A stretch of DNA of 64,000 bases from NCBI RefSeq assembly GCF_003918875.1, contig NW_025767455.1:310001-374000 (forward strand). Reading direction: 5' to 3'. The position numbers and the translations under genes are program-made. This document shows, piece by piece, positions 20,311 through 50,890 of this stretch. Each line of letters begins with the position of its first letter. Position 1 is the first letter of the stretch. Origin of the DNA: Haliotis rubra (Eukaryota). The notes below the pieces were generated by a model, which ran no database searches, was not told where the DNA came from, and worked only from the letters and a program-made list of their open reading frames with translations.

Positions 20311-23300
20311 ATGTGGAGTTTGAGCTACATGCTTGTTGTGATTTTCTTGTTTGTTTATTTGTTTAAGGTAAGTAAATAGGTAACATTTTTCTGTTCGGTA
20401 TCAATGTCGAATGCTGTTTTTAATTTTTTAAATTGTGTACATCTAATTCTGCATCTAATCATATGCAAACCTCACTCCGCGACAGCCCAGTACCAGCAGC
20501 GGGCGTGCGGCTGTACATCTGCTGGAGTATCACAGGTCATCAGATACAGGATGCAAAGGAAGCTTGTTGTCATCTAATGTCTGTGACCTACTGTTCACCA
20601 TCTGTTTCCAAGGGTTGTCCGGCAAAGAGTAAGTCGTTTTACCACACATCAAAGTCTACTCTGAAGGCGAACAACTTTGACGTTCGATTAAATCCATTGT
20701 CTACAACCATTGAAAGAACATTTATGTTTAATGCATATAAACTATATAATTTAACACTGGTGAAGATGTACAATGGTGCAAAATAGAAGCTTTTCTTGTT
20801 AGGTACGGATTGAACATGTACCACTTTCGAGTTAAGATATGCCGCGCACAGGTCTCAGGTACATCATCATTCAGGCATTTCATCACATCACATGGAATCA
20901 GCACAGATCGTATATGATCCTCTATACATTTGAAGAGTGTGTTAGTTTCATGATTTTATCACAGTTCCTGCACAAAGACGAGTGACATGTACAAAGCAAC
21001 GAGGGATGTCAAATTTGGGACAAGCATTAATGGCGGGATAGCCAATCCCATCCTCAAGTCGTTCACTGCCTTACAGGTACATTTAATTAACTGGTCGTGT
21101 CGCTTAAAAGTCAGTAGTGAAGCTATTTAACTCGTGACATCTCATTTACACCTAAGATATTACCATGTTATGCATGTTACATTCTATGCATGTTTTAGCA
21201 TTAATGATTGGCTACAATACACAGTGTGTAAATTCAAACAACGAATCAAACTTAAATATGGTGTTCAGCAATCTGATTTTTCTTTGATGTTTAACGCCGC
21301 ACTCAGCAATATTCCAGCTATAGTTCTTAGAGAACCAAGATGATTCGTAAATATTGTCAAGAGTGAACCTATCTTGTCAGGCTCACACTGAACAGGCTGC
21401 AGTAGCCCCAGGGCAAATGTCGTATTTAGTTATTCATAATACCAAGGTTTGATTCCTTAAACGGATGTACCGTGTGATGCCTTTTGATGATGCCCTTCCG
21501 CCGTGATATCACTAGTGTATTTGTTACAGTGAATGTGTGAAACCAGGGATTTCACATAATCCCTAAAAGAGTCAGTGATTTCGTTAAATCCTTGTTACTC
21601 CCAGGGATTTCATGTATTCCCCAACATTTCAGGGATTTCATGAAATTCCTGAAATATTATCTCAGGGATTTCATGAAATCCCGGTAAGCCTTTATTGAAA
21701 TAGAGAACACCAAATTTATAATGCGAGTACAGAGTATATGCTGATGAAATTCATTTGTTTGGACACGATAGACTGTTATCATACAAGCTATTACACTTCA
21801 GTATCACTTTAAAACATTTACAACGTATCGATTTACATTGGTTAGGACCACAGTAACATTTCTGGAAACCCTGACCACCACAATTCTACTCGAAAAATCA
21901 CAGCTGTGTGGAGGAACAGTTCTTTGTCCATTGTCACATCATTCGTAGAGAGAAGACGCTGAGGACAAACATGAAATAAGTGCTTTGAAAAATACCTTTT
22001 CCTTCCCAATGGCCTAATCTGTTTATACTTAAACGTAATGGTGACTGGTCTTGATGTTTCACCAATATAGGATTCGCTGCAGTCGCATTCTGTCTGGTAG
22101 ACGACACCTGCAGGATCTGGCTTCTTTGCCGGGTGGGTCTGCCTGTGGCAAAGAAGCCAGATCCATTAGGATCAAAGAACACCAGGCCTCTGTAAGAAAA
22201 ACAGACTCTAAATCCTCCATAACCGACCACCTTAAAGCCAAGCCAACCCAAACCACAACATCAGTTGGAACACCACCACAGGCACCGAGAGGAACCAGCC
22301 TGATTTAAAAAACCCGAAAACTACTTGAAGCTGTCCACATAAAGAAGATTTGTCCATATGTCCAGCCATCAACAGAGATGAAGTATCTTTCATCTCCAAG
22401 GCCTATAATCACCTGCTCAATTAATTTCATGTAACCCTACTCAACCATTGTACAATATCCATTGTGTTACACTGTACATTATCCATTGTGTAAACATCAC
22501 TTCACTACTGGCTTCCCAACAGTCCCTTTATCACTTATGTAAACAACCTATGTATATCATTCCCTACTGGCTGCCCATCAACATCCTTAATCTCTTATGT
22601 ATACAACCATGTGCATGTTCTTTACTGGCTTCCTATCAACCTACTTAATCCTGTGTTATCAACCTCCCCTATTGTATAAACAACTCATTTTCGCCTCAGC
22701 CCTCATCTATTGTACAAAAATCTCATGTATATATATCACCCAAATTACTTCCCATGTAACGTCCAAACGTTAAACATCCAATTTCGTCGTCGTCGTCCCA
22801 TGTACCACTTGCTTGACAACGACATTAGAATCTATGTCGAAACGTCGCCTATATAGAATAAAGAAGTTGTATATCCCTAAAAACAGTCCTCATTCTTCAT
22901 CTACCCAACTTCTACAATGCCAATCAAAGAAAGATGTATACAAATTTGCAGTACGCTTTTTAGGAATATGAAGGCAGGTTTTGGCGGATAAAAACGATAC
23001 ACCTGGACAAGTTTACGCGAAATCCCTGGTTTCACACATTCCTTGTAACATATTAACGGCAAAAAATACCTACTCATGCACATTAAGACATGCAAAACGA
23101 GGATGATCGAGTGGAAACTACATCATACTGGTTAACAAAGTAATTAAACAGAAATTGTATTTGTTCAGACAGGTGCGGAGGTTGAGGTCAAAGTGGGTGA
23201 TGATTACTGGTTGTCATCAACACCTCTTCCTCTGGATGACTTGAAGATCCCTCTACCGCCGTCTCACAATGGTGCTACCGTCACGCTTACCAACAGCCAT

Positions 23301-26300
23301 GCAAGGTGCGTGACTACAGCAATATTTGCTCTAAGAGTGTTCTCGTCTCGCTCTGTATCCCACTCTACATCTATATAAAGAGGTCTATCTTACACAGATT
23401 TTAACATTATGTTTTATCCATTCAAAACATTTTCTTCTTAAGTCTGCCTTTAACGTCCGACTGAAACTCTTAGAGCAGATACTATATATTCTTTTGCCAT
23501 GACATTTTGAATTGTCATGTGTAAACATGTTCAGGAACGACTTATACCTTGTACATCAATATCTGCCACTACAAGAAATGTCAATATGGGTGACTCCACA
23601 TTACAGATTAACACTGACCATCACTGTGACCTGTGACCCCCACTACTATGGACCGAACTGTTCTGTCCTGTGTAACCCAGGGTCAGCTGACCACTACACG
23701 TGTGGCCCGGACGGGTTAAAACACTGCATTAAAGGTATGTTACATAAGCTCAAGTCACACCTGAACTAAAGACAGGCATGCCGACAACTGAACATGCCTT
23801 CGACATTAACGTTTCTTAAAAACGAAGTTCTTACCTCAGATGTATTGTACTAGACACTGAGAAAGCCTCGCACTTCTTTAACACTTAATTAAAATATGTA
23901 AGGCTATCCAGGGATGTCTTTCACGTAATTTGAATCGCGCGTATAGCATGTTATCGTGAAAATGTTATATTTGTTTGGTACAACATGCATAGACTGCCAG
24001 GCTACATAGCGCTACACATTTTGCTCCCATCGTTAACCCTCTTGTCAGTGTCTAAGGGTTGCACTGTACAGCCACCGTCTCAGTGCTCTAGGGGATAGAG
24101 TGTCTGCTTGGAGAGCGAATGGCTTCGTTTCGATATATATGTTCACTATGAAAGGCTTTCAAACGTGGTATGTGTTGTTACCTTGCCATGTTCTCATTAT
24201 TGAGGGTAAAACAGATATTGCTTGTCCCAAAGTCAGCATTATTTGCCTCAGATGGATACAGAAGTGTAAACATCACTATGACACAGGCATAGTGCAAACT
24301 CCGCACGCACACACACACGCAAGCACGTCAATACGAAAGTGCAATGTCTCGAAATCGAAGTTAAACCTCATATTTTCCTCACTGAATCTTTGGTGCACGA
24401 CAAGGTAGACTTGACTTGGTTGCTGGGCATGGTCTATAGCCAAGTACTAACTATGGTTTAAAAGTCTGTCTCTATATATTTAACTAAAGGGGCTTAAGGG
24501 TCCTTCTCTGGCATATATTTAAAAAAACTACAAGGGTGTTTCCATCTTCCCTGTTTCCGATGGAAGTAAAATCTTCCGTAGTTTCGTCTTCGACAAGATC
24601 TGCACATATCTAAATCAATGTTAATGTACAGGATGTGAACCCATCTTAGAGATTGTCTAGGTGGTAGAGCACATACCTGCCATCTTCTTCACCTTATGTC
24701 TATATCATCTCCAGTCCATTCATCCCTCAGTGAACTTAATACTGACTGGAAAGTAATGGCATAAGTTAGGACATCTAAGGAACAAATTAAAACAAGGCTT
24801 TCTACAACACGTTAGTGGCACCATAATGATTATTTACAAGGATTATTCAGGACGTAAAGTGACACCACAATTAATCTTCTAGAGATTGGGGATTTAGCAT
24901 CTACAGTCATTATGTCAGACTTTAAACTAGTACAATGTTGTCAGTGTTCGATAACGCATAGTCGGTCTCTTTCATTGTTTACCTTTACAAGCATAGTGAA
25001 AAAGCTAGATATATTTAAAGTAAGTCATCACATCGCATGTATGTACGATGCATGCATATACATGTATTTTGTTTAACTCTATAAATCTACTCACATGTTA
25101 AAATCTTAATGATTTAAGTTATGCAAATGGAATATGCTTGAATCTAGATGCTTTCTCTGTAATTTTCAGGCTATACCGGAAGTGCTTGCCAACAAACACC
25201 GTGCCACAACGTTGCCTGCCATAACGGAGGAATGTGTGTTGTAGTAGGGTCAACATTCAACTGTTCCTGTCCATCTGGATTTAGTGGTGTACATTGTGAG
25301 ACCACACCTTGTACAAATAATTCATGTCAGAACCAAGGAACGTGTCATGTTGTTGGATCGATAGCCACCTGTTCTTGTAAATCTGGATTTAATGGTACAC
25401 ATTGTGAGACCAACCCCTGTACAAAGAACCCATGTCAGAATCAAGGAACGTGCCGTTTTACTGGATCAAAGGTCACCTGTTCCTGTAAAACTGGATTTAA
25501 TGGTACACATTGTGAGACCACACCCTGTACAAAGAATCCATGTCAGAATCAGGGAACGTGTCATGTTGTTGGGTCGAAAGCTACCTGTTCCTGTAGGTCT
25601 GGATTTAATGGTACACATTGTGAGACCACCCCCTGTACAAAGAATCCATGTCAGAATCAAGGAACGTGCCGTTTTACTGGATCAAAGGTCACCTGTTCCT
25701 GTAAATCTGGATTTAACGGTACACATTGTGAGACCACACCTTGTACAAAGAATCCATGCCAGAATCAAGGAACGTGCCGTTTTACTGGATCAAAGGTCAC
25801 CTGTTCCTGTAAATCTGGATTTAACGGTACACATTGTGAGACCACACCTTGTACAAAGAATCCATGCCAGAATCAAGGAACGTGCCGTTTTACTGGATCA
25901 AAGGTTACCTGTTCTTGCAAGTCTGGATTTAACGGACCACTTTGTGAGACCACCCCGTGTACAAAGAATCCATGTCAGAATCAAGGAACGTGCAGTTTTA
26001 CTGAATCAAAGGTCACCTGTTCTTGCAAATCTGGATTTAACGGTACACATTGTGAGACCACCCCCTGTACAAAGAATCCATGTCAGAATCAAGGAACGTG
26101 TCTTGTTGCTGGATCGGAAGTCACATGTTCCTGCAAATCTGGATTTAATGGTACACATTGTGAAACCACCCCCTGTACAAAGAATCCATGTCAGAATCAA
26201 GGAACGTGCCGTTTTACTGGATCAAAGGTCACCTGTTCTTGCAAATCTGGATTTAACGATACACATTGTGAGACCACCCCCTGTACAAAGAATCCATGTC

Positions 26301-29300
26301 AGAACCAGGGAACATGTCATGTTGTTGGGTCGAAAGCTACCTGTTCCTGTAAATCTGGTTTTAATGGTACACATTGTGAGACCACACCCTGTACAAAGAA
26401 CCCATGTCAGAATCAAGGAACGTGCATGTTTACTGGATCAAAGGTCACCTGTTTCTGCAGGTCTGGATTTAACGGTACACATTGTGAGACCACCCCCTGT
26501 ACAAAGAATCCATGTCAGAATCAAGGAACGTGTCATGTTGCTGGATCGGAAGTCACATGTTCCTGCAAATCTGGATTTAACGGTACACATTGTGAAACCA
26601 CCCCCTGTACAAAGAATCCATGTCAGAATCAAGGAACGTGTCATTTTACTGTTTCAATGGTCACCTGCTCTTGTCGTCCTGGATATAAAGGTACGCAATA
26701 GGCATGTGACCACGATATACCTTTGATAATATGTCAGATAAGATGGTTTCAAAGTAAATATCAAAGATGGTTTCAAATAAAAATCCTTATCAAGAGATAG
26801 CATCAACTTTGTAGATATCAGCGATGTCTTTACGTTCTTACGCCAGTTATTACGCTGTATTAATTGCTCTTTGTGTTTTGGGTTTCTTTAATACCATTAA
26901 GTAATTATTCTGTTATTCAGGAATGTACTGTGATGTTCTGTCAAACACAAAGGAAGTCACTCCATCAATGGCAGCATCATCAACAGACCGGACTCTTCCA
27001 CATCTTCCTACTCCAACAGGTATCAGTTTAAACAAGTAAACTTTAAATTTACCTGTCAAGGTGGAAATGATAACTGACAAAGTTGAACCTTCATAGGATC
27101 AAGTTTCCAGGCCATTACTTAAAATAGGCTAGACCCAAGTAGGTTCCAGGCGCGTGATTATATAATGATTGAATATAAAATCATGGCTTCTATATGTACT
27201 AATAAATCTGTGAAAAGTAACATCATGATGGCAATTACAACCTCAATCATATACTGTAGTGTGTGTATATCACACAGGTCACAGCCGCCCACAAACCACA
27301 GCCAGATTAATTTTGCCACACAGCGTCTTACAGGGAGCATACTACCACTCGTGAAATACTAGTTCCGCTTGTAAACATTATTGCCATATTTGTCAATGTT
27401 GTGTGAATGTGTGTAAAATATGGCCCCCATAAATGAACTATTTGGGACACTGTTATAATGGAACTGTGGCAGTCAGAAGTGTGTCTCGTATATTCACTTT
27501 CAAAAAGGTAAAATCTCGAAAGTTATAATTTCAGAGAAAAACAAGCTGAAGATTGACCAAACCATTTGCACGATACAATTTATCCTCATCATAACGGGGA
27601 AAGACCTGAAAAAAAGACCGGAGACTAATGTCCCTTTATGTTTTGCTTCTGTATTTGCAGGTTGTCCCCACAACATCAGTAACTGTGAGTTAGCGGAGTG
27701 TCCAGATCTGACCTCTGTCCGATGTGTCCGGTGTCGGGCTGGTTACACACAGGTTGAGGGACGCTGCATGAGTAAGTTCAAAATATAATTGAAAACAAAA
27801 TGCAATTTAGAAATAATACAGTTTTCAATGCTAATATCGCCTAATTGGGTGATAATTCATTGTGGATAGTTGTGCACAGTATCTATTAGACTCAGCCGGC
27901 CATTGGTTCGAAACCTCGATTCCTTTCGATTGCGATCATGGTTATGCATGGCTTCCTTCAAATAAAGACTACAGTTCTCGATGTAACTGAGATAATGTTA
28001 TGAACATATAAAGCCACCTAACGTGTGTTGTATTACTTTGCGGAGCCTACAAAATCTCAGTTCTTGAGAAGACGACTTTTCAATCAAACCCGGAGTGACT
28101 ATGAGTACTGATGAATTATGTTTCAGCGTGTCCAACCCGCACCCCTATCCTGCATTGTGAGGAGGAACAATCAGTCGACTGTCTCTTCAGATGGTGCAAC
28201 AGGTGCGAGCAGGGATTCTACCGGGAAGCTGCTGCTTGTGAGGGTGAGGCTTCCTTATAACTCGCATTCTTCTAAATACACCATCTAACTTTCTTCAATG
28301 TATACAGATGTCTCAGGAAAAACATGTCAACAGGCGTTTAATGATACGATTGACAATATGTCTTGACATCCAACACAGTGTGTCCCCGTCTACACGCCGG
28401 ATGTCGTGATCACGTCTGCTCCTCCGCTGATGACGTCAGGTGTGTTAGATGTCAACCGGGTTTCTTCCTGACCGGGAACACCTGTAAAGGTAAACTATAT
28501 GTTCAACTACCTTTTGTGTTTATGTTTGTGGAATAAATATACCACGGAGGCCAAATACCTTAACACATCAATTCCATATGTGCTCTTCCAGAATGTCCTT
28601 CCCCAAACCCAATGTGCAACGAATTCACCTGTAGTGACTCCACTGACGTCACATGCACCAAGTGCAAAGATGGATTCCTGGAAGTAGACGGCCAGTGTCT
28701 TCGTGAGTTATTTCAGCTGAAACACAACGTTATGCTTACAAGCCTGTTCTGACAACAACTAATACTGAGAGTATGCTATATAGATAGTGTGAGAGAGGGG
28801 TGGTTTAACTCAGATTTGAACAGAAGTCCAGTTATGTGAAGGTGTGTTAGCATACTTTGGGACGAAAGAAACACACGACTCCCCCATCTACCATTTCGGT
28901 GAATATCATCGATATGGTGCTGACAAACCGAGAATCATAATCGCAGCGGACGGGATCTGCACAGCGATGAGAATACGTTGCATCGGGTAACCAAAACAAT
29001 TTCGCATCATCAGCAAGCACTTGTAGCAATGGTAACGTTTTCAGATGTTCCTTTTAAAACTTATTATCAGAATGATAACGAACTTCTCTTTGGCGCAAGG
29101 GTGCCACGACCACAATGCCTTCTGTTGTCTGATTTCTTTTGCTGCAGTGTGTCCATCCACGGGCCTGATCCCTGACTGCGTAGACGTTGCCAGAGACGGC
29201 TGCTTTAAAAACTGGTGCAGGAAGTGTGCTCCCGGCTTCTTCATCAGCGGGACAGCTTGTGATGGTAAAACAGTTATCCTTTCGACCTGTAAATGGTACA

Positions 29301-31447
29301 ATGCCCCGAAAGCTGACGTTTAATGGTTCTTAGAATCTTTTTCCACTTCGTTGTTGCTTAGCATTATAAAAGGTCCATGCCAGAAACGTAGGAGTGTCCG
29401 AAACGAAAACCCGTACACAAAAAGCCAACACAATGATCCAAACTCCACCCGGAAACTAAACGCAGAGCAGTATCTATTGAACAATGCATAGATGTCTTCC
29501 AGTAATGATTATGAAGCTTCACGTTGATTATCCGATCTGCGCGAGCCTGCCCCTTCAAACTCTTCAGAATATAGAAATACCTGAAAATGCCACCCACTGC
29601 TCTTTATATACTAAGCAGCAAAAGAAACGTCAGTTTGGAATTTTCCGTCGCAGAAACGGATAACTGTAAACTCATTTAATGTTTGTTTTGTATATTTTTG
29701 ACAACATCTCCAACTTTACCTGAGCAAAGACATTCCTTCCCAAACTCAGAATGGAACCCAGGAAATGGTCTCAAAAACGCAACCTGATCTCGGAGATGGT
29801 ACCGTGTTCTCCATGTTTTTCATGCAACTCATGCTAAATGTGCTGTTCACAAGGACCAGCCCTATAAAATGCACTCCAAACCTGGCTGAAACATTCACAT
29901 TATCAACGTCAGCAGAATGCCGCGACACACGACAGCTGAGAAGAACCAGGCGCTAGGAAGACTTGGCCACACTGCACAAGCCGTTGCCAATCACTTAGCA
30001 GGTCAACGTTAGGACCATATACAGGCTGCATATGACGACGTGGCCAGCGTTACTCAGACCAATGTGTTATGGAAAGAGACTAATGGGGAGGTGCAAGCAT
30101 CATGGTATAGGGTGGAATAGGCCTGAACCAGAGAGTGGGTCATGTGGTGTTCCAGAACCTTGGACCAGGGAGAGGAGGCGGCATCACAGCGATGCGCTAC
30201 ATCGACCAAGCTCTCAGACCCCACGTCATACCACAGTTCGCACGTCACCGGAACAACATTTTCCAGCATGATAACGCCCGGGCCCATACTGCCAGAGCTA
30301 CACGGGACTTCCCACAGCAGACTGGTGTCAACATTATGCAGTGGCCAGCCCTTAGTCCTGATTTAAACCCAATTGAACATCTTTGGGATAAAATTCAGAG
30401 GAGACTAAATAATGTCATACCAAGGCCGAACACAGCCGATTTATTGCGCTAGGCCTTTCTCAGAGTCTTGAAATTGTCTTGAGTTATTCATTGATGTGTC
30501 AAGATATTGTACACAAAAAATGTTTTTGATCCGCTTATTATGTCCATTTCTGTAATGATTTGATTACAATGCCTATCTAAGTTTGAATTCGTACTTACGT
30601 TTTTTTTTGCTGCTGAGTATATTATGACGTTAAAAAGTACATTAGCTCTTCCGACGCACACCTAGTGTCATCATTTTCAGTGATCGATCCATATACTTTT
30701 CATTACTATAACACCCCTTACACAAAAGAGAAATCTGTTCTAAGGATAGTCAAGGCTGAGTATTCTTTGGCGTTTCAGAAATATGCCAAAGCCTCACCTG
30801 CCGAAATTATATCAATTAACATACTTTTCCACTTTATTCTTTTCAAAGAGTCCATTTTTCAGTCTGCCCCCCACCTGGTGTAGGCTGTCAACTTGCTGAA
30901 TGTAATTCTACCCAAGACTCGCGCTGTGTCACATGTTTCCATGGCTACGACTTAAAGGGTGGAATCTGCAGTGAGTAGTTGTTATTCCATAGTTCGACTA
31001 ACGGGGATCGGGTGGTCAGTCTCGCTGACTTGGATGACACATGTCATCGTATCCCAATTGCATAGATCGATGCTCATATTGTTGATCACTGGATTGTCTG
31101 ATCATGACTAGATTATCATCATACCGCCTCAATATAGCTGGAATATTGCTTAGAGCTGCGTTAAACAAACTATACCACTTGCATATTAAAACAGTTTATT
31201 AAAATCGTGAGTTTCACATTTCTTGTGTAGATTGTAATGATACAAGCACACTTGTTTTCCAGCACATTCCCATGGCAACGAATCAGTTACTTCCTCTACT
31301 CAGTGCGTGGACAACCCACACGTCGACTGTGCTTCTCTACACGCATCTCTCAACGTCTGCTCAGAACCGACTACGGCCTGTGAATACTGCCCTCGATACT
31401 GCCACATGTGCAACACGTGCACTCAGGGTGTGCCTATCATTGGCTGA
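20311..31447 (+). CDS. Gene 2: secreted Delta-like protein (SP-MNNL/C2-DSL-14 EGF-6 furin-like Cys-rich-ShKT), 1018 aa
   Basis: 14 GT-AG exons, all in phase, total 3057 nt: 20311-20367, 20486-20628, 20965-21076, 23169-23305, 23607-23734, 25170-26690, 26921-27019, 27661-27771, 28127-28243, 28379-28489, 28592-28702, 29148-29264, 30863-30970, 31263-31447. No TM segment. AATAAA at 31754. Confidence 0.9.
22000..22900 (+). mobile_element. Penelope-like element fragment (GIY-YIG) nested in the Ginger-like element
   Basis: GVVYQTECDCSESYIGET on the minus strand and RIKEHQASVRK..S.I.DHL on the plus strand; PLE-type 3' region. Copy at ~44190-45780. Confidence 0.75.
22811..22848 (+). ncRNA. Candidate minimal hammerhead ribozyme (Penelope-associated)
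   Basis: TTGACAA core (U3-A8 variant), stem II GACAT/ATGTC, GAAAC-GTC. Second copy at 45684-45721. Confidence 0.5.
25170..26690 (+). repeat. Gene 2 EGF exon: 14 EGF-like repeats, 108-bp period
   Basis: Uninterrupted ORF 25232-26701; exon 1521 nt; last Cys supplied by the next exon. Confidence 0.95.
27661..30970 (+). CDS. Gene 2 exons 8-13: six furin-like / growth-factor-receptor-type Cys-rich modules
   Basis: Each phase 1-1 exon (108-117 nt) encodes CP-x-C-x-C-x-CxxCxxG(F/Y)x5-C, e.g. CPRLHAGCRDHVCSSADDVRCVRCQPGFFLTGNTC. Confidence 0.8.
29609..30619 (+). mobile_element. Tc1-like element in gene 2 intron 12
   Basis: TIRs TACT(A/C)AGCAGCAAAA, TA TSD, FQHDNARAH and WPALSPDLNPIEHLW motifs. Empty site in gene 3 at ~52933. 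Confidence 0.9.
31263..31447 (+). CDS. Gene 2 last exon: ShKT-like domain
   Basis: CVDNPHVDCASLHASLNVCSEPTTACEYCPRYCHMC fits ShKT spacing (CxD..C..C..CPxxCxxC); ends NTCTQGVPIIG*. Confidence 0.8.
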
Positions 31448-33789
31448 TGAAGCAGAATGAATGAGATCTGTTTCAGGCTGTTTTGCACAGTATTTCAGTC
31501 ACACCGGGTGAGCCGCTGCTGAAACCCCGACGAGATGACTGTGCAAATGTTCGCCATTTACGCGTCTTACAAGTATGATTCTCTCAAATTGAAAAACGTA
31601 ATCAGCTTGATCATCGGATTTGAACCCGTAGTTATATAAGTGGTGCAGCTCTGCATAATGCAATGCAACTTAAAACCATAAAAATGTTATTATGTGTAAT
31701 GTATATGGGTTTGTTTACAAAGATGTTGTAATTGTTGGGATAATTATATGTATAATAAATTGATATATTGTAAAAAAACATGTATGCATTAAGTTATTGT
31801 GTTTGGAATATATTTGTGCAATCATTTATTCGATGTGATAATGTTATAACATGTTAATGCTGTACAATCACTTCTTTTTGTTTTGTTTTGTTTTGTATTT
31901 TTATTTGGTTTAAAAACATGTACAAATATTCCAGCTGTATGAAGCCCGTGATTTGTAATATGAGCATCGATCAACACAAATGGGATTCCACAACATAAAC
32001 CAAATTACCCAGTCGGACAGGACCAGTGGTTTCCAGACACAGAGTCAAAGTCCTGTAGACTCTGAGTACGGTATGTCCTCGGTTGTGTGTCAATAAACTA
32101 CAATGATTCCAGAAGAATCGGTTTCAGAAATCGCTCATGAACATTGTATTTTGTCCATTAATGTGATTTCCGTAAATGTGCCATCAACTTAACTGATATA
32201 ATCTGTGCAAGATATTTTGTGATGCCCTCCCATACAATTGTCGCATGCATGTGAAGCCCGACCTTGCATGCTAAAAAATGATTTAACTTTAACCAATGGC
32301 AAGAAGATAGCGTAAACTATTAAATAATTACACACACGCACACACGTGCATAGACACACATAAACTTACGCATGTATGTACGTACGTACATACACAGATG
32401 TCTCTGCATTATTTACTATATGTTATGATATTATGTATATTTTGACCACAACATATACTATTTAACTGCAGCTGATTGAATGGTACATGCTCATGATATA
32501 GTTACAATTGTACAATCGACTCTGCTTTTAGCAGACGTTTCTTATGAATTTGGAAAGGATTTTATCGCTTTTGAATACTGGGCTCTGAAAACAGACTGAC
32601 TTACTGAGCAGTGTCGCACCTACATCCACATACACACCATTGCAACAACGGATACACTAGTGTACCATTGAAATGTCAAAACTTTTGCTAGTTTATCGTT
32701 TTAAAGGGACATATGACTGATATTTACATCCATGGCAGATGACCATAGATTTTATTTAGATGATTAGTCAGAGCACCCAATTGTCCATCACGTCATTTGC
32801 CATGAAAGGTCAGACTCGTGTACGTCCAGGGGGTTGTGAGAATAGTACTGCCCAGTAGCACGATCAGTTCCATATCTGGTGAAAAGCTTGCCCTATCCTG
32901 TCCTGACCACGTCACCTTGTAATGAAGAGAGGGATCGAGTAAGCCTATGTGAGTATAGAACCTAGTGTTGAGTTATTCCTTGTAATGCCAGAGTGCCAGT
33001 ACATGAATGTAATGTTGTAGTTAGGAGTCTCGGTCGTCAGACCTCTCACTCCTAAACGTAGAAGCCCCGGACGGACCAAGCGAGTATGTAACCTGAGCTT
33101 ACATCACCCCTGACAATGCGGAACGGCCATCTTAATAGGTAACTGGTAGTAGGGTTTACTAACACCCAAATCCCGGTTACGACACTAGCGTTGTTTTATA
33201 TCCATAGAGCCATATCCATCCATAGCCATTGCTATATAAATTGTGTCTCACATGGCTAAACCTAAACCTTGTCTTACATGCAATTCTCGCTTCCGATATC
33301 TGCAATTGTACCTTTGTTTCAATATGTACCACAGGCATTAACAGCCGCATGATTGCAACTTAAGGATGCGAAATAGATATCGAATGCAAATCTCAAAACG
33401 TTTTTAAAGACATAATTGATACATTGATACATACTATTGAACTCACCATGCAACATACAATGATTCTTTTTCTAAACACAGATATTATTCCTTCATACAC
33501 ATTGTGACTCAATGTTTTTTATCACTTCCTTAAAATCCGTTAATATTACTTAATATCCTTCTTATCACAGTAGGAATCGAATCTAAATCTTTTGCTGGCA
33601 AAATCCACCGTTATATTGAAGAGTTATCTAATTGTGAGAAATCATAATTAGCTAACGTCATGTTAATGAAGTGTAAGGCCAAGAATCATGGTTAAGCGTA
33701 GACTGAATATTTGGATCTTAGATCAACCACTTTTGTAAGCAGGTATGGTGAGTATTGTGCCCTGGGCACCACTTGAATGGGGATGGAGG

Positions 33790-39680: not shown

Positions 39681-42600
39681 AGTTTTTCTCTCCTTGAATT
39701 GTCTCATTTGAAGTCATTTCCCAAATGAATGCATAGGTTATATGAAATAAAAGCAAGTTGAAATAGTTTAAGTCTATTTTAATAACTGACAAGAAACTTG
39801 AAACCCAGATCAAGTAAACAATTAAAACATAAACTCAACGAAGCTGCCAGTCTGCGTCCAAAAATCCTATATTTTGCGCTGCGCATTTATCAACGGAAGT
39901 CAATTACTAAACTATCGATAGTCACACATACTATCGATGCATCGACAATTTTTCGTTTCTACCATCGACTAATTGCCATTGCTTCGATAGTTCGATCCAT
40001 CGTTACAGCCCTAATTACTGATACATACATTAGAAGTTGGTTTCCTTATCCGGGATAGTGAGTGGCAGTGTAAAATGGATACACAGGGTACTTCATAATG
40101 ATACAGGCAAGTGTTTTGGGGAAGGAGGAAGGCACAAAGATACCCTGACACAACCGCCAACTATCAAATATCTACATTCACCCATCTACCATAACGTTCA
40201 TGTCTTTACCAAGGAACCTAAGTTAACATTGAGGATAACTTCCCAAATGGTAGTGTTTCTTTATAGAGTGATCAATCTCAGATCCCACAGTACTGTTCGG
40301 TTTGGTAGCGCTAGATAGTACCATGTGTGATTGATATTGCTTAATGATCATATCATTTCGTGAGTGAGTGAGTTTAGTTTTACGTCGCAGTCAGCAACAT
40401 TCCAGCTATATGGCGTTACTGAAGTTACTGAAGATCACTTCTAACCCGGATCTACACGGGTTCATTTCGTGAAGGCTAGTTAATAAATTCACCCAGCGAA
40501 TCACAACATGAATAATTCCATTATCTTAAGTGTTTTCATGTTCATCTGATGTTGCTTGCTCGGTCCACAGGAACATCAGTAGCTGCGTCATGGCATTAAA
40601 TGGCTGTGTTAGAGGAAGAAGTTTTGGATAAGTAAGAATAAGTTAGAGGAAGAAGATTTGGATAAGTAAGAATAAGTTGGATTGTCCACCCAAGCTATCC
40701 GCGAAGATTTGGATAAGTAAGAATAACCGATGGATTGCCCCACGCCAAGCGCAAACCGCTAAAATTGAGGAGGCGTGCATCTCTTCGATCGGCATACCGT
40801 TCCACTAACCGATCTTACCCTAAGTCAATCGTAAAGTTAAGATCCAGAGTCTAAGTTGACCAACTTAGGATCGCCAAAATCAATCGTAAAGAAACCAAAA
40901 CATTATTCTATGTGAAGAAGAAGAGCGAGCATTACACTGTGAGCGTGTTTTTCGAGACCGCTCATAGATTCTAGATACATTATCAGATGATGTGATTTTG
41001 GCGAGGTCCAGGATGCATCGTCACGCCTTGTTTATGCTGATCGATAAGGTTCAGCCACATGGGTATGCCAAATACCCAGCGTTCACGCGCACTTGCCCCT
41101 GAAACCAAAATGCTCTCTACCGTAAAACTGCTCTTTTTCGCTCGAGGTTTCTTCTCTTCCTTTACACATGGTTCCAAAACTGCTAGACTATGCAAAGGGA
41201 AATAACTCGTGCCTCGCATTTTTCTATCTCTCGCACGAAAGAATCTCGATCTTAGCTACAATCGGATCGTAAGATCGGGATCGGCTACGATCGGCCTAAG
41301 ATCGGTTAGTGGAACGGGCGTAACTTTTAGCAAAGACAATTGTAAAATTGGCGTAACTTGCTAAGATTGATCTTAGATAAGATCGGCTAGTGGAACAGCA
41401 CCCTGGTGACGTAGCAAGTGGGAACCAGGATTCTATCGTCAAGCTTGTTAGAACTTGCTAATTACTGTAATCTACATGCAACTGTTGTGACATACACACT
41501 GATATCTGTGGAATACTGTAAGGGACATTCTCGCGATCTCGCATTCTTGCGGTCTCGACCTTTGGAAACAAGCTAAAAATGCCCAAAGTGCGAGAATGCG
41601 AGATTGCGAGATTTGACTGACTGACTGACTGAGTTTAGTTTTACGCCGCTTTTAGCAATATTCCAGCAATATCACGGCGGGGGACACCAGAAATGGGCTT
41701 AACACAGTGTGCCCATGTGGGGAATCGAACCCGGGTCTTCGGCGTGACGAGCCAAGCGAGATTTGACAGCATGTGCAAATGTCGCATTCTCGCGTTGTCG
41801 ACTTTTGACAAAAAGTGCTATGTACCAAAAACACGAGAATGCGAGATCGCGAGAATGTCCCTTACAGTATTCCATTGATATCTCAGGGTTATCTCATACT
41901 GTACTGAACCAAGTGATAATGACACTCAACGATAACATCAATTGTTGATAGATGCAGAAGTAGAAGACAAACCTATTGTGTTGTACCTTTGGTGTTAATT
42001 TAAAACGAGTGGGGGGAAAAATAAGGAGGTGCATATATGTTATCCATTTAGGTGGGCAAACCAGTATTACATTTCTGGACATCAGCAAACAGAGGAGGGG
42101 GTATCCAGTTGTCTACAACCCAAAAGCATCATGTGGAGTTTGAGCTACATGCTTGTTGTGATTTTCTTGTTTGTTTATTTGTTTAAGGTAAGTAAATAGG
42201 TAACATTTTTCTGTTCGGTATCAATGTCGAATGCTGTTTTTAATTTTTTAAATTGTGTACATCTAATTCTGCATCTAATCATATGCAAACCTCACTCCCC
42301 GACAGCCCAGTACCAGCAGCGGGCGTGTCTCTGTACATCTGCTGGAGTATCACAGGTCATCAGATACAGGATGCAATGGAAGCTTGTTCTCATCTAATCC
42401 CTGTGACCTAATGTTCACCGTCTGTTTCAAGGGGTTGTCCGGCAAAGAGTAAGTGGTTTTACTACACATCAAAGTCTAATCTGAACTTGGTAAACAACCT
42501 TGAAGTTCTACTAGCCATTGTCTACAATCATTAGGAAAAAGTCATCTAACGCATATTTTACTATATACACTGACGTTGCTGAAGATGGTAAAAAGAGGCG

Positions 42601-44890
42601 CTTTTCGTCAGGTACAGACTATTGTAAATGTACGACTTCCCAATTATGACCGACAACAACCGATCGTATTTTGAGAGTGTGAAGGTGTCTCATGATTTTG
42701 TCACAGTTCCTGTACAAAGACGAGTGACCAGTACAAGGGCACGAGGGATGTCAAATTTGGGACGAGCATTAATGGCGGGATAACCAACCCCATCGTCAAG
42801 TCGTTAACCGCGTTCCAGGTAAATTTAGCGATCTTTGTGTTGCTGAAAATTCAGTACTGAAGCTATTTAAGCCATTACGTTTACATCTACACTTGAAATA
42901 GTACTATGTTATGCATGTTACATTCTATGCATTCTCCATCGGTAACCATAAACAGTGTACAAAAAAGGTGGTCCACGGATGAAACTTAAATTTACGTCCT
43001 TTTCTGACAGAAACAAGGTGACTCTTACATATTGACAAGAGTGAATTTATTTATGCACATACTGAAGCCAAGGTGTGAAGCATATTTCAAAGGATGCAAA
43101 GAAAGCCTTTTTGAATCTGCTCATCCCTGTAGCCTAATGTTCACCGTCTGTTTCAAGGGGTTGTCCGGCAAAGAGTAAGTGGTTTTACCACACATCAAAG
43201 TCTACTCTGAAGGCGAACAAGTTTGACGTTCGATTAAATCCATTGTCTACAATCATTGAAAGACTATTTATGGTTAATGCATATTAACTATATAATTTAA
43301 CACTGGTGAAGATGTACAATGGTGCAAAATAGAGGTTGTTCTTATGAGGTATAGATTGAACATGTACCACTTTCGAATTAAGATATGCCGCGCACAGGTC
43401 TCAGGTACATCATAATTCAGGTATTTCATCACATCAGATGGAATCAGCACAAATCGTATATTATCCTATATGCACGGGAAGGGTGTGACAGAGCCTCATG
43501 ATTATATAACAGTTCCTGCACAAAGACGAGTGACCAGTACAAGGGCACGAGGGACGTCGCATTTGGGACGAACATTAATGGCGGGATAGCCAATCCCATT
43601 CTCAAGTCGTTCACTACCTTACAGGTACATTTAACTAACTGGTCATGTCGCTTAAAAGTCAGTAGTGAAGCTATTTAACTAGTGACATCGTTACAGGGAA
43701 TGTGTGAAACCAGGGATTTCACATAAACCCTAAATCCAGAGTCAGTGATTTTATGAAATCCCTGTTATTCCTAGGGATTTCATGTATTCCCTAAAATTTC
43801 CAGGGATTTCATGAAGTTACTGAAATATTAGCTCAGGGATTTCATGAAATCCCTGTAAGGCTTTATTGAAATAGAGAACACCAAATTTATAATGCGAGTA
43901 CAGAGTATATGCTGATAAAATTCATTTGTTTGGACAAGATAGGCTGTTGTCATACAAGTTATTACACTTCAGTAGCACTTTACAACATTTACAACGTATC
44001 GATTTACATTGGTTAGGACCACAGTTACATTTCTGGAAACCCTGACCACCACAATTCGACTCGAAAATCACAGCTGTGTGGAGGAACAGTTCTTTGTCCA
44101 TTGTCACATCATTCGTAGAGAGAAGACGCTGAGGACAAACATGAAATATGTGCTTTGAAAAATACCCTTTCCTTCCCAATGGCCTAATCTGTTTATGCTT
44201 AAAAGTAATGGTGACTTGATGTTTCACCAATATAGGATTCGCTGCAGTCGCATTCTGTCTGGTAGACGACACCTGCAGGATCTGGCTTCTTTGCCGGGGT
44301 GGGTCTGCCTGTGGCAAAGAAGCCAGATCCATTAGGATCAAAGAACACCAGGCCTCTGTAAGAAACAGACTCTAACTCCGCCATAACCGACCACCTTAAA
44401 GCCAACCCAAACCACAACATCAGTTGGAACACCACCAAAGTCATCGAGAGGACCAGCCTGATTTAAAAACCCGAAAACTACTTGAAGCTGTCCACATAAA
44501 GAAGATTTGTCCATTTGTTCAGCCATCAACAGAGATGAAGGATATTTCATCCCCAAGGCCTATCATCACTTGCTCAATTAATCTAATGTAACCCCACTCA
44601 ACCATTGTACAATATCCATTGTGTAACACTGTACATTATCCATTGTGTAAACATCACTTCACTACTGGCTTCCCAAGAGTCCTTATATCACTTATGTAAA
44701 CAACCTATGGACATCATTCCCTGTTGGCTGCCCATCAACATCCTTAATCTCTTATGTATACAACCATGTACATGTTCTTTACTGGCTTCCTTTCAACCTA
44801 CTTAATCCTGTGTTATCAACCTCTCCTATTGTATAAACAACTCATTTTCGCCTCATCCCTCATCTATTGTACAAACATCCCATGCATATA

Positions 44891-45650
44891 TACTGGCCAC
44901 ATAAAGAAACAGTGCACACAGAAAATAGAAATATAGGCACACAGCGTATTTATACATAAATTATACATTTGTGAACACAGCAAGTACTGGAGACAATCAA
45001 ACGCTCATGCACGTGCCAGGCGACGTGACGTCATTGGCGGTGTCCTGAGGCCTTGCAATTTGTTACAGCACGTGCATCCCGTACAGATGCACACAAAATG
45101 TGAAACTCTGAAATTGCTGTCACTGTCGAAAGCTTGATCTTTGGTCATTCAAACGTTCACCAATTCACATGAGAAGATACTTGCACATCATGCCAAGATT
45201 AACATGTGCTCAACGTCATTAAACCATTGGAATGGTTCGAGCAGGAATGAGCCAACAACAGGTGGCAGCACATTTCCAATGCCATCGTAACACGATATCT
45301 GCATTGGTCAGGCGTTATCGAAACAGTAATGACGTCGCCGACCACCCACGTTCAGGGCGTTCCCGACGTAACGACGCCAAGACAGGACAGATGGAATCGG
45401 GTGACTCATCTCAGATACAGGTTCCAGACAGCAGTGACCACGTCCCAGACCATTCCTCAGTCCTTCAATGCTCATTTGCTAGCCTTTGAACTTCTGACGT
45501 CATCGTTACGGATATTGTTCATGTTCTTTTGACATTTTCTTTGGTCAGATACTTCAGCTTATAACGTGTCTACATCATTTCGTCTTTGCTGTGTTGTATT
45601 TCAATTATGAAGGCATTTTCTGTGTGCACAGTTTTTTTATGTGGCTAGTA
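44891..45650 (+). mobile_element. Tc1-like deletion derivative inserted in the Penelope fragment
   Basis: TIRs TACT(G/A)GCCACATAAA..AAC.GTGCACACAGAAAAT, TA TSD, HTH fragment (ORF 45232). Empty site at ~22730. Confidence 0.85.
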
Positions 45651-50333: not shown

Positions 50334-50694
50334 ATGGTGAGGTGAGGTGAAATTGGGGTTTAAAGTCGTGCTTGAGAATATATCGCTCATATGACGACGT
50401 GCATGCGTGTGTATGTGTTTGTGCGGCTGCTTGTACTAGCCCAGACTGAAGCTGGTTTTATAGTGCTAGCCCACTGGGATACCATGCCGCAGTGAAGCAT
50501 GAATACCCCACTCAGACACATTATACTGACTCCGAGCCGACCAGTCTTTGTTGTACCCATTAATGCCGAGCGCCAGGCAGAGACCAACAAGTACCATATT
50601 GTAACGTCATTTGGTATGACTCGGTCTGGGATCGAACCCGCGACCTTCCGCTCTCCGGGCGGACGCTCTAACCACTACACCACGGAGGCGGTCC
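50334..50694 (-). mobile_element. tRNA-derived SINE family C
   Basis: tRNA-like head with GGTTCGATCCC, (CACCT)n tail, near-perfect TSD TGGTAAC(T/C)ACA. Degenerate relatives at ~9140-9355 and ~24080-24290. Confidence 0.8.
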
Positions 50695-50890
50695 TGGTAA
50701 CCACAAACTATTTAGGGGCGGTGGGGTAGACTAGTGGTTAAAGCGTTGGCTTGTCACGCCGAAGACGCGGGTTCGAATCCCCACATGGGTACAATGTGTG
50801 AAGCCCATTTCTGGTGTCCCCCGCCGTGATATTGCTAAAAGCGGCGTAAAACTAAACTCAGTCAGTCAGTCAGTCAGTCAGTATAAACTA

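What the first reader, a model, noticed from the sequence alone, without database searches (positions are those of the whole stretch)
20311..31447. Intact secreted DSL-EGF-furin-ShKT protein
Fourteen exons splice in frame without any correction. The protein has a signal peptide, no TM segment and a C-terminal ShKT. I know of no described Notch-ligand-like protein with this layout. ShKT occurs in channel toxins and in mucosal/immune proteins, so the head may target the ShKT module to membranes.
Basis: partly seen in the sequence, partly recalled or inferred. Interest (0 to 1): 0.85.

Follow-up and report, generated by a model that had tools for sequence, protein, structure and literature searches.

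The report
Secreted abalone Delta-like protein, ShKT tail
An intact 14-exon abalone (Haliotis rubra) gene encodes a secreted relative of Notch ligands whose membrane anchor has been replaced by a cysteine-repeat plus ShK-toxin-like tail that is also found on secreted cadherin-like proteins; it is a real, genus-conserved but undescribed domain combination whose function is still untested.

Summary
Fourteen + strand exons (20311-31447), all GT-AG, join into a 3057-nt ORF of exactly 1018 aa. It has one N-terminal hydrophobic signal-like segment and no TM.

Domains:
- MNNL-like head. It aligns to DLL4, and its nearest Atlas clusters are MNNL at 0.92.
- DSL, Pfam 35 bits against a cut-off of 24.
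- 14 EGFs.
- Six one-exon cysteine repeats, only loosely furin/VSP-like.
- An 8-Cys ShKT-like end, Pfam 17 bits, below the 20.9 cut-off. Homologous gastropod ShK domains and an AF2 model matching hookworm ShK peptides support it.

The window is Haliotis rubra. RefSeq models in H. asinina and H. rufescens show the same layout under misleading names, so it is unpublished but not unseen.

New here:
- The same tail ends secreted cadherin-repeat proteins.
- The tail is under purifying selection (dN/dS 0.24, p 5e-5), while the head is not shown to be.
- The Notch-binding DSL face is not conserved.

No RNA data were obtainable. The scan noted this stretch before (s1-327954).

The parts
20311..20367 (+). 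Exon 1: start codon (A at -3) and hydrophobic signal-like peptide MWSLSYMLVVIFLFVYLFK; ends in phase 0
   Evidence: Identical exon in the tandem copy at 42131-42187. Same N-terminus in RefSeq XP_046549956.1 (P0093).
20486..20628 (+). Exon 2: first part of the MNNL (C2-like) head
   Evidence: P0093 reads through the same junctions. The head aligns to DLL4 5mvx residues 28-239. Atlas nearest clusters are MNNL at 0.92.
20965..21076 (+). Exon 3: MNNL-like head, middle part
   Evidence: Matches P0093 and P0193.
23169..23305 (+). Exon 4: MNNL-like head, last part
   Evidence: Matches P0093 and P0193.
23607..23734 (+). Exon 5: DSL domain (first five cysteines); the last cysteine lies at the start of exon 6
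   Evidence: Pfam DSL 35.1 bits against a cut-off of 24.2. The H. rufescens homologue scores 40.2 bits over profile positions 1-45 of 46.
25170..26690 (+). Exon 6: end of DSL plus 14 EGF units. Thirteen are a 108-bp tandem array, and 13 units carry the O-fucose consensus C2-x4-[ST]-C3. None has the calcium-binding consensus.
   Evidence: TRF finds period 108, 13.1 copies, 87% matches. Pfam EGF E = 1e-18. Motif counts.
26921..27019 (+). Exon 7: last cysteine of EGF 14 and a Ser/Thr/Pro linker
   Evidence: The homologous E7-E8 junction is used in RefSeq XP_046549954.1 of the tandem copy (P0125).
27661..27771 (+). Exon 8: cysteine repeat R1 (6 Cys, 37 aa)
   Evidence: AF2 models it as beta-hairpins with pLDDT 70-86.
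28127..28243 (+). Exon 9: cysteine repeat R2
28379..28489 (+). Exon 10: cysteine repeat R3
28592..28702 (+). Exon 11: cysteine repeat R4
29148..29264 (+). Exon 12: cysteine repeat R5, the most conserved unit. It is 35-36 of 39 residues identical even to the cadherin-type tails.
   Evidence: invariant columns.
30863..30970 (+). Exon 13: cysteine repeat R6
31263..31447 (+). Exon 14: short linker, an 8-cysteine ShKT-like domain (residues 972-1010), the conserved end ...TQGVPIIG, and the stop codon
   Evidence: Pfam ShK 16.4-17.1 bits against a cut-off of 20.9, aligned over the full profile. 15 of 27 homologous domains hit Pfam ShK. AF2 pLDDT is 82 with three helices, and the best PDB matches are ShK-like Acan1 and AcK1.
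31754..31759 (+). First AATAAA after the stop (a second at 32092)

Best explanation
Gene 2 of a three-gene Haliotis rubra cluster encodes a 1018-aa secreted, rod-like, cysteine-rich glycoprotein.

Shown:
- It has a Notch-ligand-type head (MNNL-like plus DSL), 14 non-calcium-binding EGFs, a short Ser/Thr/Pro linker, six one-exon cysteine repeats and an ShKT-like C-terminal cap.
- The head and EGF array are shared, at about 94% nt identity in head exons E2-E5, with the oppositely oriented neighbour gene 1. Gene 1 continues instead into a Ser/Thr-rich, mucin-like repeat exon, a TM exon and a cytoplasmic tail.
- The tail is a cassette of phase 1-1 exons. At 67-70% identity it also terminates secreted cadherin-repeat proteins of the same genus. 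One such cadherin-tail gene lies about 125 kb beyond the window's end on the same contig.
- The layout is conserved in H. asinina and H. rufescens.
- The tail evolves under purifying selection, with repeat R5 almost invariant across both head families.
- The head evolves fast and has lost the conserved Notch-binding face of DSL.

Inferred:
- The gene arose by exon shuffling, which swapped the membrane anchor of a lineage-specific Delta-like surface protein for a 'secreted tail' cassette.
- The product most likely acts outside the cell as a soluble or matrix/mucus-held counterpart of the membrane paralogue. It would present or compete for the same head-binding partner. The conserved tail (R5 and the ShKT-like cap) would dock it to another extracellular component.
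- Canonical force-dependent Notch activation is unlikely.
For: - Gene model: 14 GT-AG exons, 1018 aa, signal-like N-terminus only.
- DSL scores above the Pfam cut-off and the EGFs are strong.
- The head aligns to DLL4, DLL1 and JAG1 structures with E from 2.5e-19 to 7e-12, including the MNNL region of DLL4. Atlas nearest clusters are MNNL.
- ShKT-like cap: the six canonical Cys are invariant across 27 aligned domains, and 15 of the 27 hit Pfam ShK. The profile hits H. rufescens 'mucin-5AC-like' with Pfam ShK at 75 bits. The AF2 model has pLDDT 82, and its two closest PDB matches are ShK-like peptides with TM 0.55-0.67 and rmsd about 2 A.
- Same layout in RefSeq XP_067670993.1 (H. asinina) and XP_048248175-8 (H. 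rufescens). Identity to the H. asinina protein is 82% in the head, 90% in the repeats and 87.5% in the ShKT end.
- Same tail on cadherin-repeat proteins P0121-P0124, and a TM variant P0126.
- A tail at C2565:498-501 kb (-) has a cadherin head at 508-509 kb.
- dN/dS of gene 2 against gene 3: tail 0.24 (22.5 synonymous against 19.5 non-synonymous changes, binomial p 4.7e-5); head 0.68 (p 0.42).
- R5 is 35-36 of 39 residues identical to all cadherin tails.
- Gene 1 has a TM exon at 663-803 (-), with no homologue in gene 2.
- A second, divergent locus (C2633:3.333-3.342 Mb, -) carries a DSL-like exon, EGFs, R2/R5/R6-like repeats and an ShKT-like end ...LIIG.
Against: - No transcript or peptide evidence from this species: no RNA run was listed, and no transcript-derived fragments were found.
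- None of my three length-limited protein searches (together covering 176-1449 aa) returned a protein that joins gene 2's head to its tail. Whether H. rubra's annotation holds such a model I could not establish.
- The supporting RefSeq models are computational. The H. asinina model skips exon 7 and lacks the signal exon.
- The tandem copy (gene 3) is damaged, so the duplication is young and intactness alone is weak evidence of function.
- ShKT scores below Pfam's cut-off, and the H. rufescens domain gives no Pfam hit at all.
- The functional part (soluble counterpart, docking by the tail) is inference only.
Confidence: 0.7

Rival explanations
1. It is a diffusible Notch ligand or antagonist. 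The DSL head binds Notch EGF11-12 as canonical ligands do. Lacking a TM anchor and an endocytic tail, it would block signalling, or activate it only when immobilised through its tail. Secreted nematode DSL proteins would be the comparison (from my own knowledge, not checked here).
For: MNNL-like, DSL and EGF order. Best solved-structure relatives are DLL1, DLL4 and JAG1. Pfam DSL is above its cut-off. O-fucose consensus is present in 13 EGFs.
Against: The conserved DSL face of Jagged1 that is needed for cis and trans interaction (F199, R201, R203, D205, F207; PMC3415683) reads L, N, G, gap, A here, with a two-residue deletion. The atypical EGF1-2 of canonical ligands is replaced by ordinary 36-aa EGFs. 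The head shows no significant purifying selection among the three paralogues (dN/dS 0.5-0.7). Other DSL-type matches lie elsewhere in the genome.
Confidence: 0.2
2. The 1018-aa model is a prediction artefact that fuses two units. The DSL-EGF head would be one gene ending near exon 6 or 7. The cysteine-repeat/ShKT exons would be the stranded 3' part of a duplicated cadherin-type gene, either silent or separately transcribed.
For: In the tandem copy, RefSeq itself splits head (P0093) and tail (P0125) into two models. The same tail belongs to cadherin genes nearby. There is no RNA evidence.
Against: The split in gene 3 is explained by its lesions: deletion of the exon-6 donor, +1 in E12 and -1 in E13. 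The tail-only model starts at an internal Met of exon 7 and has no signal peptide, which is implausible for a protein with 44 cysteines. All junctions are phase-compatible. Two other species have fused models. The tail shows dN/dS 0.24. A divergent second locus has the same order of parts.
Confidence: 0.1
3. The ShKT end is the effector: a potassium-channel-blocking, toxin-like module that the lipid- or receptor-binding head carries to cell membranes.
For: ShK-like fold. MNNL/C2 domains of Notch ligands are reported to bind lipid (title and abstract of PMC3888931, seen).
Against: The C3-C4 loop (SEPTTACEY) holds no Lys, so it cannot hold the Lys-Tyr dyad that PMC7333891 describes for ShK toxins. 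That paper notes mucin-type ShKT domains lacking the dyad are unlikely channel blockers. The nearest relatives of this domain belong to proteins that the sources name mucin-5AC-like, IgGFc-binding-like and cadherin-related. Of these, I checked signal peptide and absence of a TM segment only for the cadherin-related ones.
Confidence: 0.05
4. It is a young, not yet disabled duplicate with no function of its own, so its intactness is a matter of age.
For: dS to gene 3 is only about 0.1, and gene 3 already carries three lesions.
Against: The architecture is conserved in H. asinina and H. rufescens. Synonymous changes are in excess in the tail (p 4.7e-5). All 26 splice sites are canonical and there is no stop in 1018 codons.
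Confidence: 0.1

Closest known systems
Canonical Delta/Serrate/Jagged Notch ligands (DLL1, DLL4, JAG1)
   Same: N-terminal MNNL-like region, a DSL domain with the six-cysteine pattern, tandem EGFs and O-fucose consensus sites. These are the best solved-structure relatives.
   Different: No TM or cytoplasmic tail. The DSL Notch-binding face residues are not conserved, and there is a two-residue deletion. No atypical EGF1-2. Extra cysteine repeats and an ShKT-like end.
Secreted DSL proteins of Caenorhabditis elegans (e.g. DSL-1)
   Same: DSL-family proteins without a membrane anchor. This comparison rests on my own knowledge and was not checked here.
   Different: No sequence relationship beyond the domains. 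Nematode proteins are short and, as far as I know, do not have this tail. The Haliotis head type was found only in gastropods (Haliotis; Gigantopelta at 38-40% identity).
RefSeq models XP_067670993.1 (H. asinina 'delta-like protein C') and XP_048248175-8 (H. rufescens 'notch homolog 2-like' / 'adhesive plaque matrix protein 2-like')
   Same: Same order of domains and the same tail. 80-90% identity in the tail and 82% in the head for H. asinina.
   Different: Different EGF counts: 6 in H. asinina, and four extra EGFs before the tail in H. rufescens. Incomplete 5' ends. Purely automatic names, and no publication found.
Haliotis 'cadherin-related family member 1-like' / 'dachsous-like' secreted proteins (P0121-P0124)
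   Same: The same 5-6 cysteine repeats, ShKT-like cap and ...P-I-I-G end at 67-70% identity, with R5 at about 90%. Signal peptide and no TM.
   Different: The head is made of cadherin repeats instead of MNNL-DSL-EGF.
ShKT/SXC domains (Pfam PF01549), as in P0133 (named mucin-5AC-like, H. rufescens) and at the C-terminus of P0174/P0181 (named IgGFc-binding-like, H. asinina and Patella)
   Same: Six-cysteine spacing, conserved Asp residues, helical fold, and C-terminal or inter-mucin position.
   Different: Two extra cysteines, one in the C3-C4 loop and one three residues after C6. Score is below Pfam's cut-off. No Lys in the C3-C4 loop.
Furin-like / VSP-type cysteine-rich repeats (R-spondin Fu1-Fu2, PCSK5/6 cysteine-rich region, Giardia VSP)
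   Same: Units of about 37 aa with a CxxC...G[FY] core, modelled as paired beta-hairpins. Distant profile hits carry Pfam VSP. The nearest shapes are PCSK6, Furin-like_2 and VSP clusters.
   Different: No Pfam furin-like family is hit. Z is only 3.3 and TM about 0.3. Exactly one repeat per phase 1-1 exon.

Membership tests
DSL (Delta/Serrate/LAG-2) Notch ligands | DSL domain with its six-cysteine signature | tested here: met
   Pfam PF01414 scores 35.1 bits (cut-off 24.2) on exon 5 alone. The H. rufescens homologue scores 40.2 bits over profile positions 1-45 of 46. The cysteines are invariant in alignment A3.
DSL (Delta/Serrate/LAG-2) Notch ligands | N-terminal MNNL (C2-like) domain | tested here: inconclusive
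   No Pfam MNNL hit. However, phmmer aligns residues 33-233 of the head to DLL4 5mvx residues 28-239 (domain E 6e-10), and the nearest Atlas clusters are MNNL (0.92, 190 shared features).
DSL (Delta/Serrate/LAG-2) Notch ligands | Conserved Notch-binding face of DSL (human Jagged1 F199, R201, R203, D205, F207; PMC3415683) | tested here: not met
   In the alignment to JAG1 4cbz these positions read L, N, G, gap, A. The RPRDDxFGH motif is replaced by NPGSAD--H in all Haliotis sequences.
DSL (Delta/Serrate/LAG-2) Notch ligands | Single-pass TM segment and cytoplasmic tail | tested here: not met
   No hydrophobic window at or above 1.6 beyond the N-terminus. No TM-exon homologue exists. The paralogue gene 1 does have one, at 663-803 (-).
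DSL (Delta/Serrate/LAG-2) Notch ligands | Binding to and activation of Notch | not testable with these tools
   Needs binding and reporter assays.
ShKT / SXC domain (PF01549) | Six cysteines with ShK spacing and a profile match above the curated cut-off | tested here: inconclusive
   The spacing fits, and the alignment covers the whole profile (1-37 of 37), but the score is 16.4-17.1 bits against 20.9. 15 of 27 aligned homologous domains hit PF01549, best E 3e-7.
ShKT / SXC domain (PF01549) | ShK fold (short helices held by three disulfides) | tested here: met
   The AF2 model has pLDDT 82 and three helices. The only close PDB matches are ShK-like Acan1 6dri (TM 0.57/0.67, rmsd 2.2) and AcK1 2md0 (E-values not significant for a 49-aa query). 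Atlas matches include ShK-bearing clusters at TM 0.46-0.55.
ShKT / SXC domain (PF01549) | Lys-Tyr dyad of channel-blocking ShK toxins | tested here: inconclusive
   The C3-C4 loop (SEPTTACEY) has no Lys, as the sequence shows directly. The dyad is described in PMC7333891. I made no residue-level alignment to a toxin, so its position is not mapped here. An Arg-Tyr pair sits between C4 and C5.
Furin-like repeats (FU; PF00757, PF15913, PF14843) | Profile match to a furin-like or growth-factor-receptor cysteine-rich family | tested here: not met
   No Pfam hit for single repeats or for the whole H. rufescens tail; only VSP at E 0.45. The PDB profile search found nothing.
Furin-like repeats (FU; PF00757, PF15913, PF14843) | Fold of paired disulfide-linked beta-hairpins like R-spondin Fu1-Fu2 or the PCSK cysteine-rich region | tested here: inconclusive
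   The AF2 repeats have pLDDT 70-86 and are beta-hairpins. The best VIA match is R-spondin at Z 3.3. Foldseek E is at or above 1e-3. Atlas TM is about 0.3 to PCSK6, Furin-like_2 and VSP clusters.

The most novel reading that the evidence does not exclude
The cysteine-repeat plus ShKT-like cassette is a portable 'release-and-dock' tail. In abalone it has independently replaced the membrane anchor of two unrelated families of cell-surface proteins, Delta-like and cadherin-like. Juxtacrine molecules thereby become secreted ones, held on a common extracellular partner through the near-invariant repeat R5 and the ShKT-like cap. The fast-evolving DSL heads would then form a lineage-specific recognition system (for example immune, gamete or settlement recognition) rather than acting in Notch signalling.
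Probability: 0.2. Interest if true: 0.65.

Novelty: new variant of a known kind. Interest (0 to 1): 0.45.

Why it matters
If the protein is made, it is a clear natural example of exon shuffling, with all cassette exons in phase 1-1. The shuffling converts a membrane-bound, Notch-ligand-type protein into a secreted one, using a tail shared with secreted cadherin-like proteins. That gives a testable handle on what MNNL-DSL heads can do outside canonical Notch signalling, and on what non-toxin ShKT domains do at the ends of secreted gastropod proteins. It also shows that public abalone annotations name these genes misleadingly ('furin-like protease 2', 'delta-like protein 4', 'notch homolog 2-like', 'adhesive plaque matrix protein 2-like'). 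It is confined to one genus as far as the searches reached, and its function is unknown, so the general importance is moderate.

Tried and rejected
- RNA evidence: the look-up of sequencing runs listed no run, so read laying could not be used.
- The look-up of encoding contigs had no record for P0003.
- A search for transcript-derived protein fragments spanning the tail found only RefSeq models.
- A candidate exon at about 24037-24095 (cysteine-bearing ORF) was rejected. It cannot be spliced in frame without a stop, and all homologous models join exon 5 directly to exon 6.
- TM search: the hydrophobic ORFs after the stop (31674-31995) are AT-rich and not homologous to gene 1's TM exon.
- Pfam on single cysteine repeats and on the spliced H. 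rufescens tail gave no family.
- PDB sequence-profile searches with the tail (nothing) and the ShKT alignment (nothing significant).
- Foldseek of the tail model against PDB gave nothing at E <= 1e-3.
- In the whole-tail AF2 model the ShKT part had pLDDT about 30. It was usable only when folded alone with a deeper alignment.
- Literature searches for ShKT+DSL+Notch, abalone+ShK, abalone Delta-like expansion and the RefSeq accession numbers found no description.
- Complex prediction was not used. I make no specific binding claim that it could test.

Full report
**What is there.** The window is eukaryotic DNA with no N runs. Between 20311 and 31447 on the + strand I rebuilt the gene from stop-free stretches and splice motifs. 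I then joined the pieces. There are 14 exons, every intron is GT...AG, the CDS is 3057 nt, and the product is 1018 aa with one terminal stop. Exons 6 to 13 are all phase 1-1. Each of exons 8-13 encodes one complete cysteine repeat. The only strongly hydrophobic 19-residue window is the N-terminus (Kyte-Doolittle 1.87); the next best is 1.28. The product therefore has a signal-like start and no TM segment. AATAAA signals follow the stop at 31754 and 32092.

**Which organism, and what annotation exists.**
- A protein search with the large EGF exon found Haliotis proteins. Exact look-ups show that two RefSeq proteins of Haliotis rubra lie on a contig of 535,923 bp, which is the length of the window's contig, C2565.
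- These two proteins are XP_046549956.1 'delta-like protein 4' (P0093) and XP_046549954.1 'furin-like protease 2' (P0125). They are the head and the tail of the tandem copy (gene 3, about 42131-53791), not of the gene in question.
- They use the homologous junctions E1-E6 and E7-E12.
- H. asinina XP_067670993.1 ('delta-like protein C', 679 aa) and H. rufescens XP_048248175-8 carry the same full order of domains, including the tail.
- Identity of gene 2 to the H. asinina protein is 82% in the head, 90% in the six repeats and 87.5% in the last domain.
- None of my three length-limited searches returned a protein joining gene 2's own head and tail.
- All of these are computational models.

**Domains: the head.**
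- Pfam gives DSL at 35.1 bits (cut-off 24.2) on exon 5, and strong EGF hits.
- The head's best solved relatives are DLL1, DLL4 and JAG1. The DLL4 alignment runs through the MNNL region.
- The nearest Atlas clusters for residues 20-152 are MNNL families at 0.92. Pfam's MNNL model is not hit.
- There are 14 EGF units. Thirteen are a 108-bp tandem array, and 13 carry the O-fucose consensus. None has the calcium-binding consensus.

**Domains: the cysteine repeats.**
- The six repeats (C-P-x4-6-C-x3-5-C-x5-7-C-x2-C-x2-G-[FY]-x6-7-C) hit no Pfam family, singly or as the spliced H. rufescens tail.
- A profile of five tails searched against 1.84 billion representatives gave only 69 hits at E <= 1e-3. 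Beyond the Haliotis proteins, most of the repeat-matching hits I scanned carry Pfam VSP, and one cluster is labelled PCSK5 by its source.
- AF2 models the repeats as paired beta-hairpins with pLDDT 70-86.
- The best solved match is R-spondin Fu1-Fu2 at Z 3.3. The nearest Atlas shapes are PCSK6, Furin-like_2 and VSP clusters at TM about 0.3.
- 'Furin-like' is therefore a fair description of the shape, but it is not a tested membership.

**Domains: the C-terminal cap.**
- The last exon scores 16.4-17.1 bits on Pfam ShK, below the 20.9 cut-off, but is aligned over the whole profile.
- The same profile search picked up gastropod proteins whose matched regions are ShK domains. These include H. rufescens 'mucin-5AC-like' (Pfam ShK 75 bits) and two Ser/Thr-rich proteins without a source name. 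C-terminal domains of IgGFc-binding-like proteins of H. asinina and Patella were also matched.
- In an alignment of 27 such domains the six canonical cysteines are invariant, and 15 members hit Pfam ShK.
- Folded with that alignment, the window's domain has pLDDT 82 and three helices. Its only close PDB matches are the hookworm ShK-like peptides Acan1 and AcK1, with TM 0.55-0.67 and rmsd about 2 A.
- It has two extra cysteines (8 in all), and all copies in alignment A1 end in a C-terminal Gly...P-I-I-G in four of five...P-V-V-G in one.
- The C3-C4 loop has no Lys, so it cannot hold the Lys-Tyr dyad that PMC7333891 describes for ShK toxins. I did not map the dyad's position by alignment. That paper argues that ShKT domains without the dyad, as in a limpet mucus protein, are unlikely to block channels.

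**Surroundings.** The window holds three paralogues.
- Gene 1 (- strand) shares exons 2-6 and has an intact head, about 94% nt identical in exons. It continues into a Ser/Thr-rich repeat exon (4164-5084) and a TM exon (663-803). Gene 2 has no counterpart of that TM exon.
- Gene 3 is a 90-98% identical tandem copy of gene 2 with three lesions. The 3' end of the EGF exon with its donor is deleted (about 48163). There is a +1 insertion in E12 and a -1 deletion in E13. This explains why RefSeq split it.
- In the whole genome this head type occurs only in these three genes.

**The tail is a shared cassette.**
- The same tail, at 67-70% identity, ends secreted cadherin-repeat proteins of H. rubra, H. 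rufescens and H. asinina.
- A related H. rubra protein has cadherin, three repeats and then a TM segment.
- Tail copies lie twice in the window, once at C2565:498-501 kb (-) with a cadherin head at 508-509 kb, three times on C464, and in divergent form on C2633 and C2478.
- Repeat R5 is 35-36 of 39 residues identical between gene 2 and every cadherin-type tail. R1 and R4 are only 30-49% identical.
- The C2633 locus carries, on one strand and in order, a DSL-like exon (BLASTP E 3e-6 to the window's DSL, but no Pfam hit), an EGF array, R2-, R5- and R6-like repeats, and an ShKT-like end ...LIIG. This suggests that the DSL-EGF-tail order is older than the window's duplication. I did not model that gene fully.

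**Selection.**
- Between gene 2 and gene 3 the tail exons show dS 0.112 and dN 0.027, ratio 0.24. There are 22.5 synonymous against 19.5 non-synonymous changes, where neutrality predicts about 1 to 3.4 (binomial p 4.7e-5).
- The head shows a ratio of 0.68 (p 0.42).
- Head ratios among all three paralogues are 0.5-0.7 and not significant.
- The tail is therefore constrained coding sequence. The head evolves fast or under weak constraint.

**Is it a Notch ligand?** Homology of the head to Notch ligands is clear. However, the residues that form the conserved Notch-binding face of DSL (human Jagged1 F199, R201, R203, D205, F207; PMC3415683) read L, N, G, gap, A in the alignment to JAG1. The RPRDDxFGH motif is replaced by NPGSAD--H in all Haliotis members. 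There is no TM or endocytic tail. I therefore do not file it as a functional Notch ligand. It is a divergent, gastropod-restricted DSL-family protein, whose nearest head relatives outside Haliotis are Gigantopelta at 38-40% identity.

**Most likely origin and role.**
- Shown: a secreted architecture, a head shared with a membrane paralogue, a constrained tail shared with secreted cadherin-like proteins, and conservation within the genus.
- Inferred: exon shuffling replaced the anchor of a Delta-like surface protein with a secreted-tail cassette. The product then works outside the cell as a soluble or matrix/mucus-held counterpart of gene 1, with R5 and the ShKT-like cap docking it to another extracellular component.
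- Rivals: a diffusible Notch ligand or antagonist, a fused-model artefact, a toxin-like channel effector, and a functionless young duplicate. Each is weighed in its own section.

**Novelty.** No paper was found, but automatic annotations of two other Haliotis species already contain the layout. Secreted DSL proteins and proteins combining EGF and ShK domains are known kinds (the first from my own knowledge; for the second, P0091). I rate it a new variant of a known kind and of moderate interest. The most interesting element is the tail cassette shared by Delta-like and cadherin-like proteins.

Noticed in passing
window 42131-53791 (+), gene 3: A tandem copy of the gene, 90-98% identical, with three lesions: the 3' end and donor of the EGF exon are deleted near 48163, there is a +1 insertion in the E12 homologue (about 52540), and a -1 deletion in the E13 homologue (about 53216). 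It has only about 5 EGF units. RefSeq splits it into XP_046549956.1 (head) and XP_046549954.1 (tail, frameshifted end). The two single-base indels lie in homopolymer runs, so they could be assembly errors.
   Followed up: partly
window 42296-42458 / 43091-43184 and 42697-42827 / 43505-43634: Gene 3 carries a local duplication of the exon 2 and exon 3 region. Two copies of each are found by blastn.
   Followed up: no
window 663-803 (-) and 4164-5084 (-), gene 1: The oppositely oriented paralogue has the same head and EGF array. It then has a 307-aa open frame of Ser/Thr/Lys/Pro-rich tandem repeats (mucin-like) and a strong TM exon (KD 3.4).
   Followed up: partly
window 25257-26674: Each 108-bp EGF unit contains AATG|GTACAC, a phase-1 GT that is compatible with the phase-1 acceptor of exon 7. 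In gene 3, which lost the normal donor, such a site could restore an intact last EGF. The scan also noted this as s1-328067.
   Followed up: partly
window 30135-30449 (+), intron 12: A fragment of a DDE_3 (Tc1/mariner-type) transposase, Pfam 48.6 bits, inside the 1.6-kb intron between repeats R5 and R6.
   Followed up: yes
G000:C2633:3332986-3342315 (-) (loci L013, L015): A divergent locus with a DSL-like exon, alternating EGF types, R2-, R5- and R6-like cysteine repeats, and an ShKT-like end ...LIIG. It may be an older member of the same architecture. A transposase-like ORF also lies in it.
   Followed up: partly
G000:C2565:498386-509045 (-); G000:C464 (three copies): Cadherin-repeat genes ending in the same cysteine-repeat/ShKT-like tail. 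One lies about 125 kb beyond the window's end on the same contig.
   Followed up: partly
window 22494-22650: A 58-bp tandem repeat (2.7 copies) in intron 3. A similar tract lies in gene 3 at about 44587-44802.
   Followed up: no
window 1018-aa model, last residue; alignment A1: Every tail in alignment A1, from both head families and three species, ends in a C-terminal Gly (...P-I-I-G or ...P-V-V-G). The Gly is invariant in A1. A terminal Gly is the usual substrate for peptide amidation (my own knowledge). This is untested.
   Followed up: no
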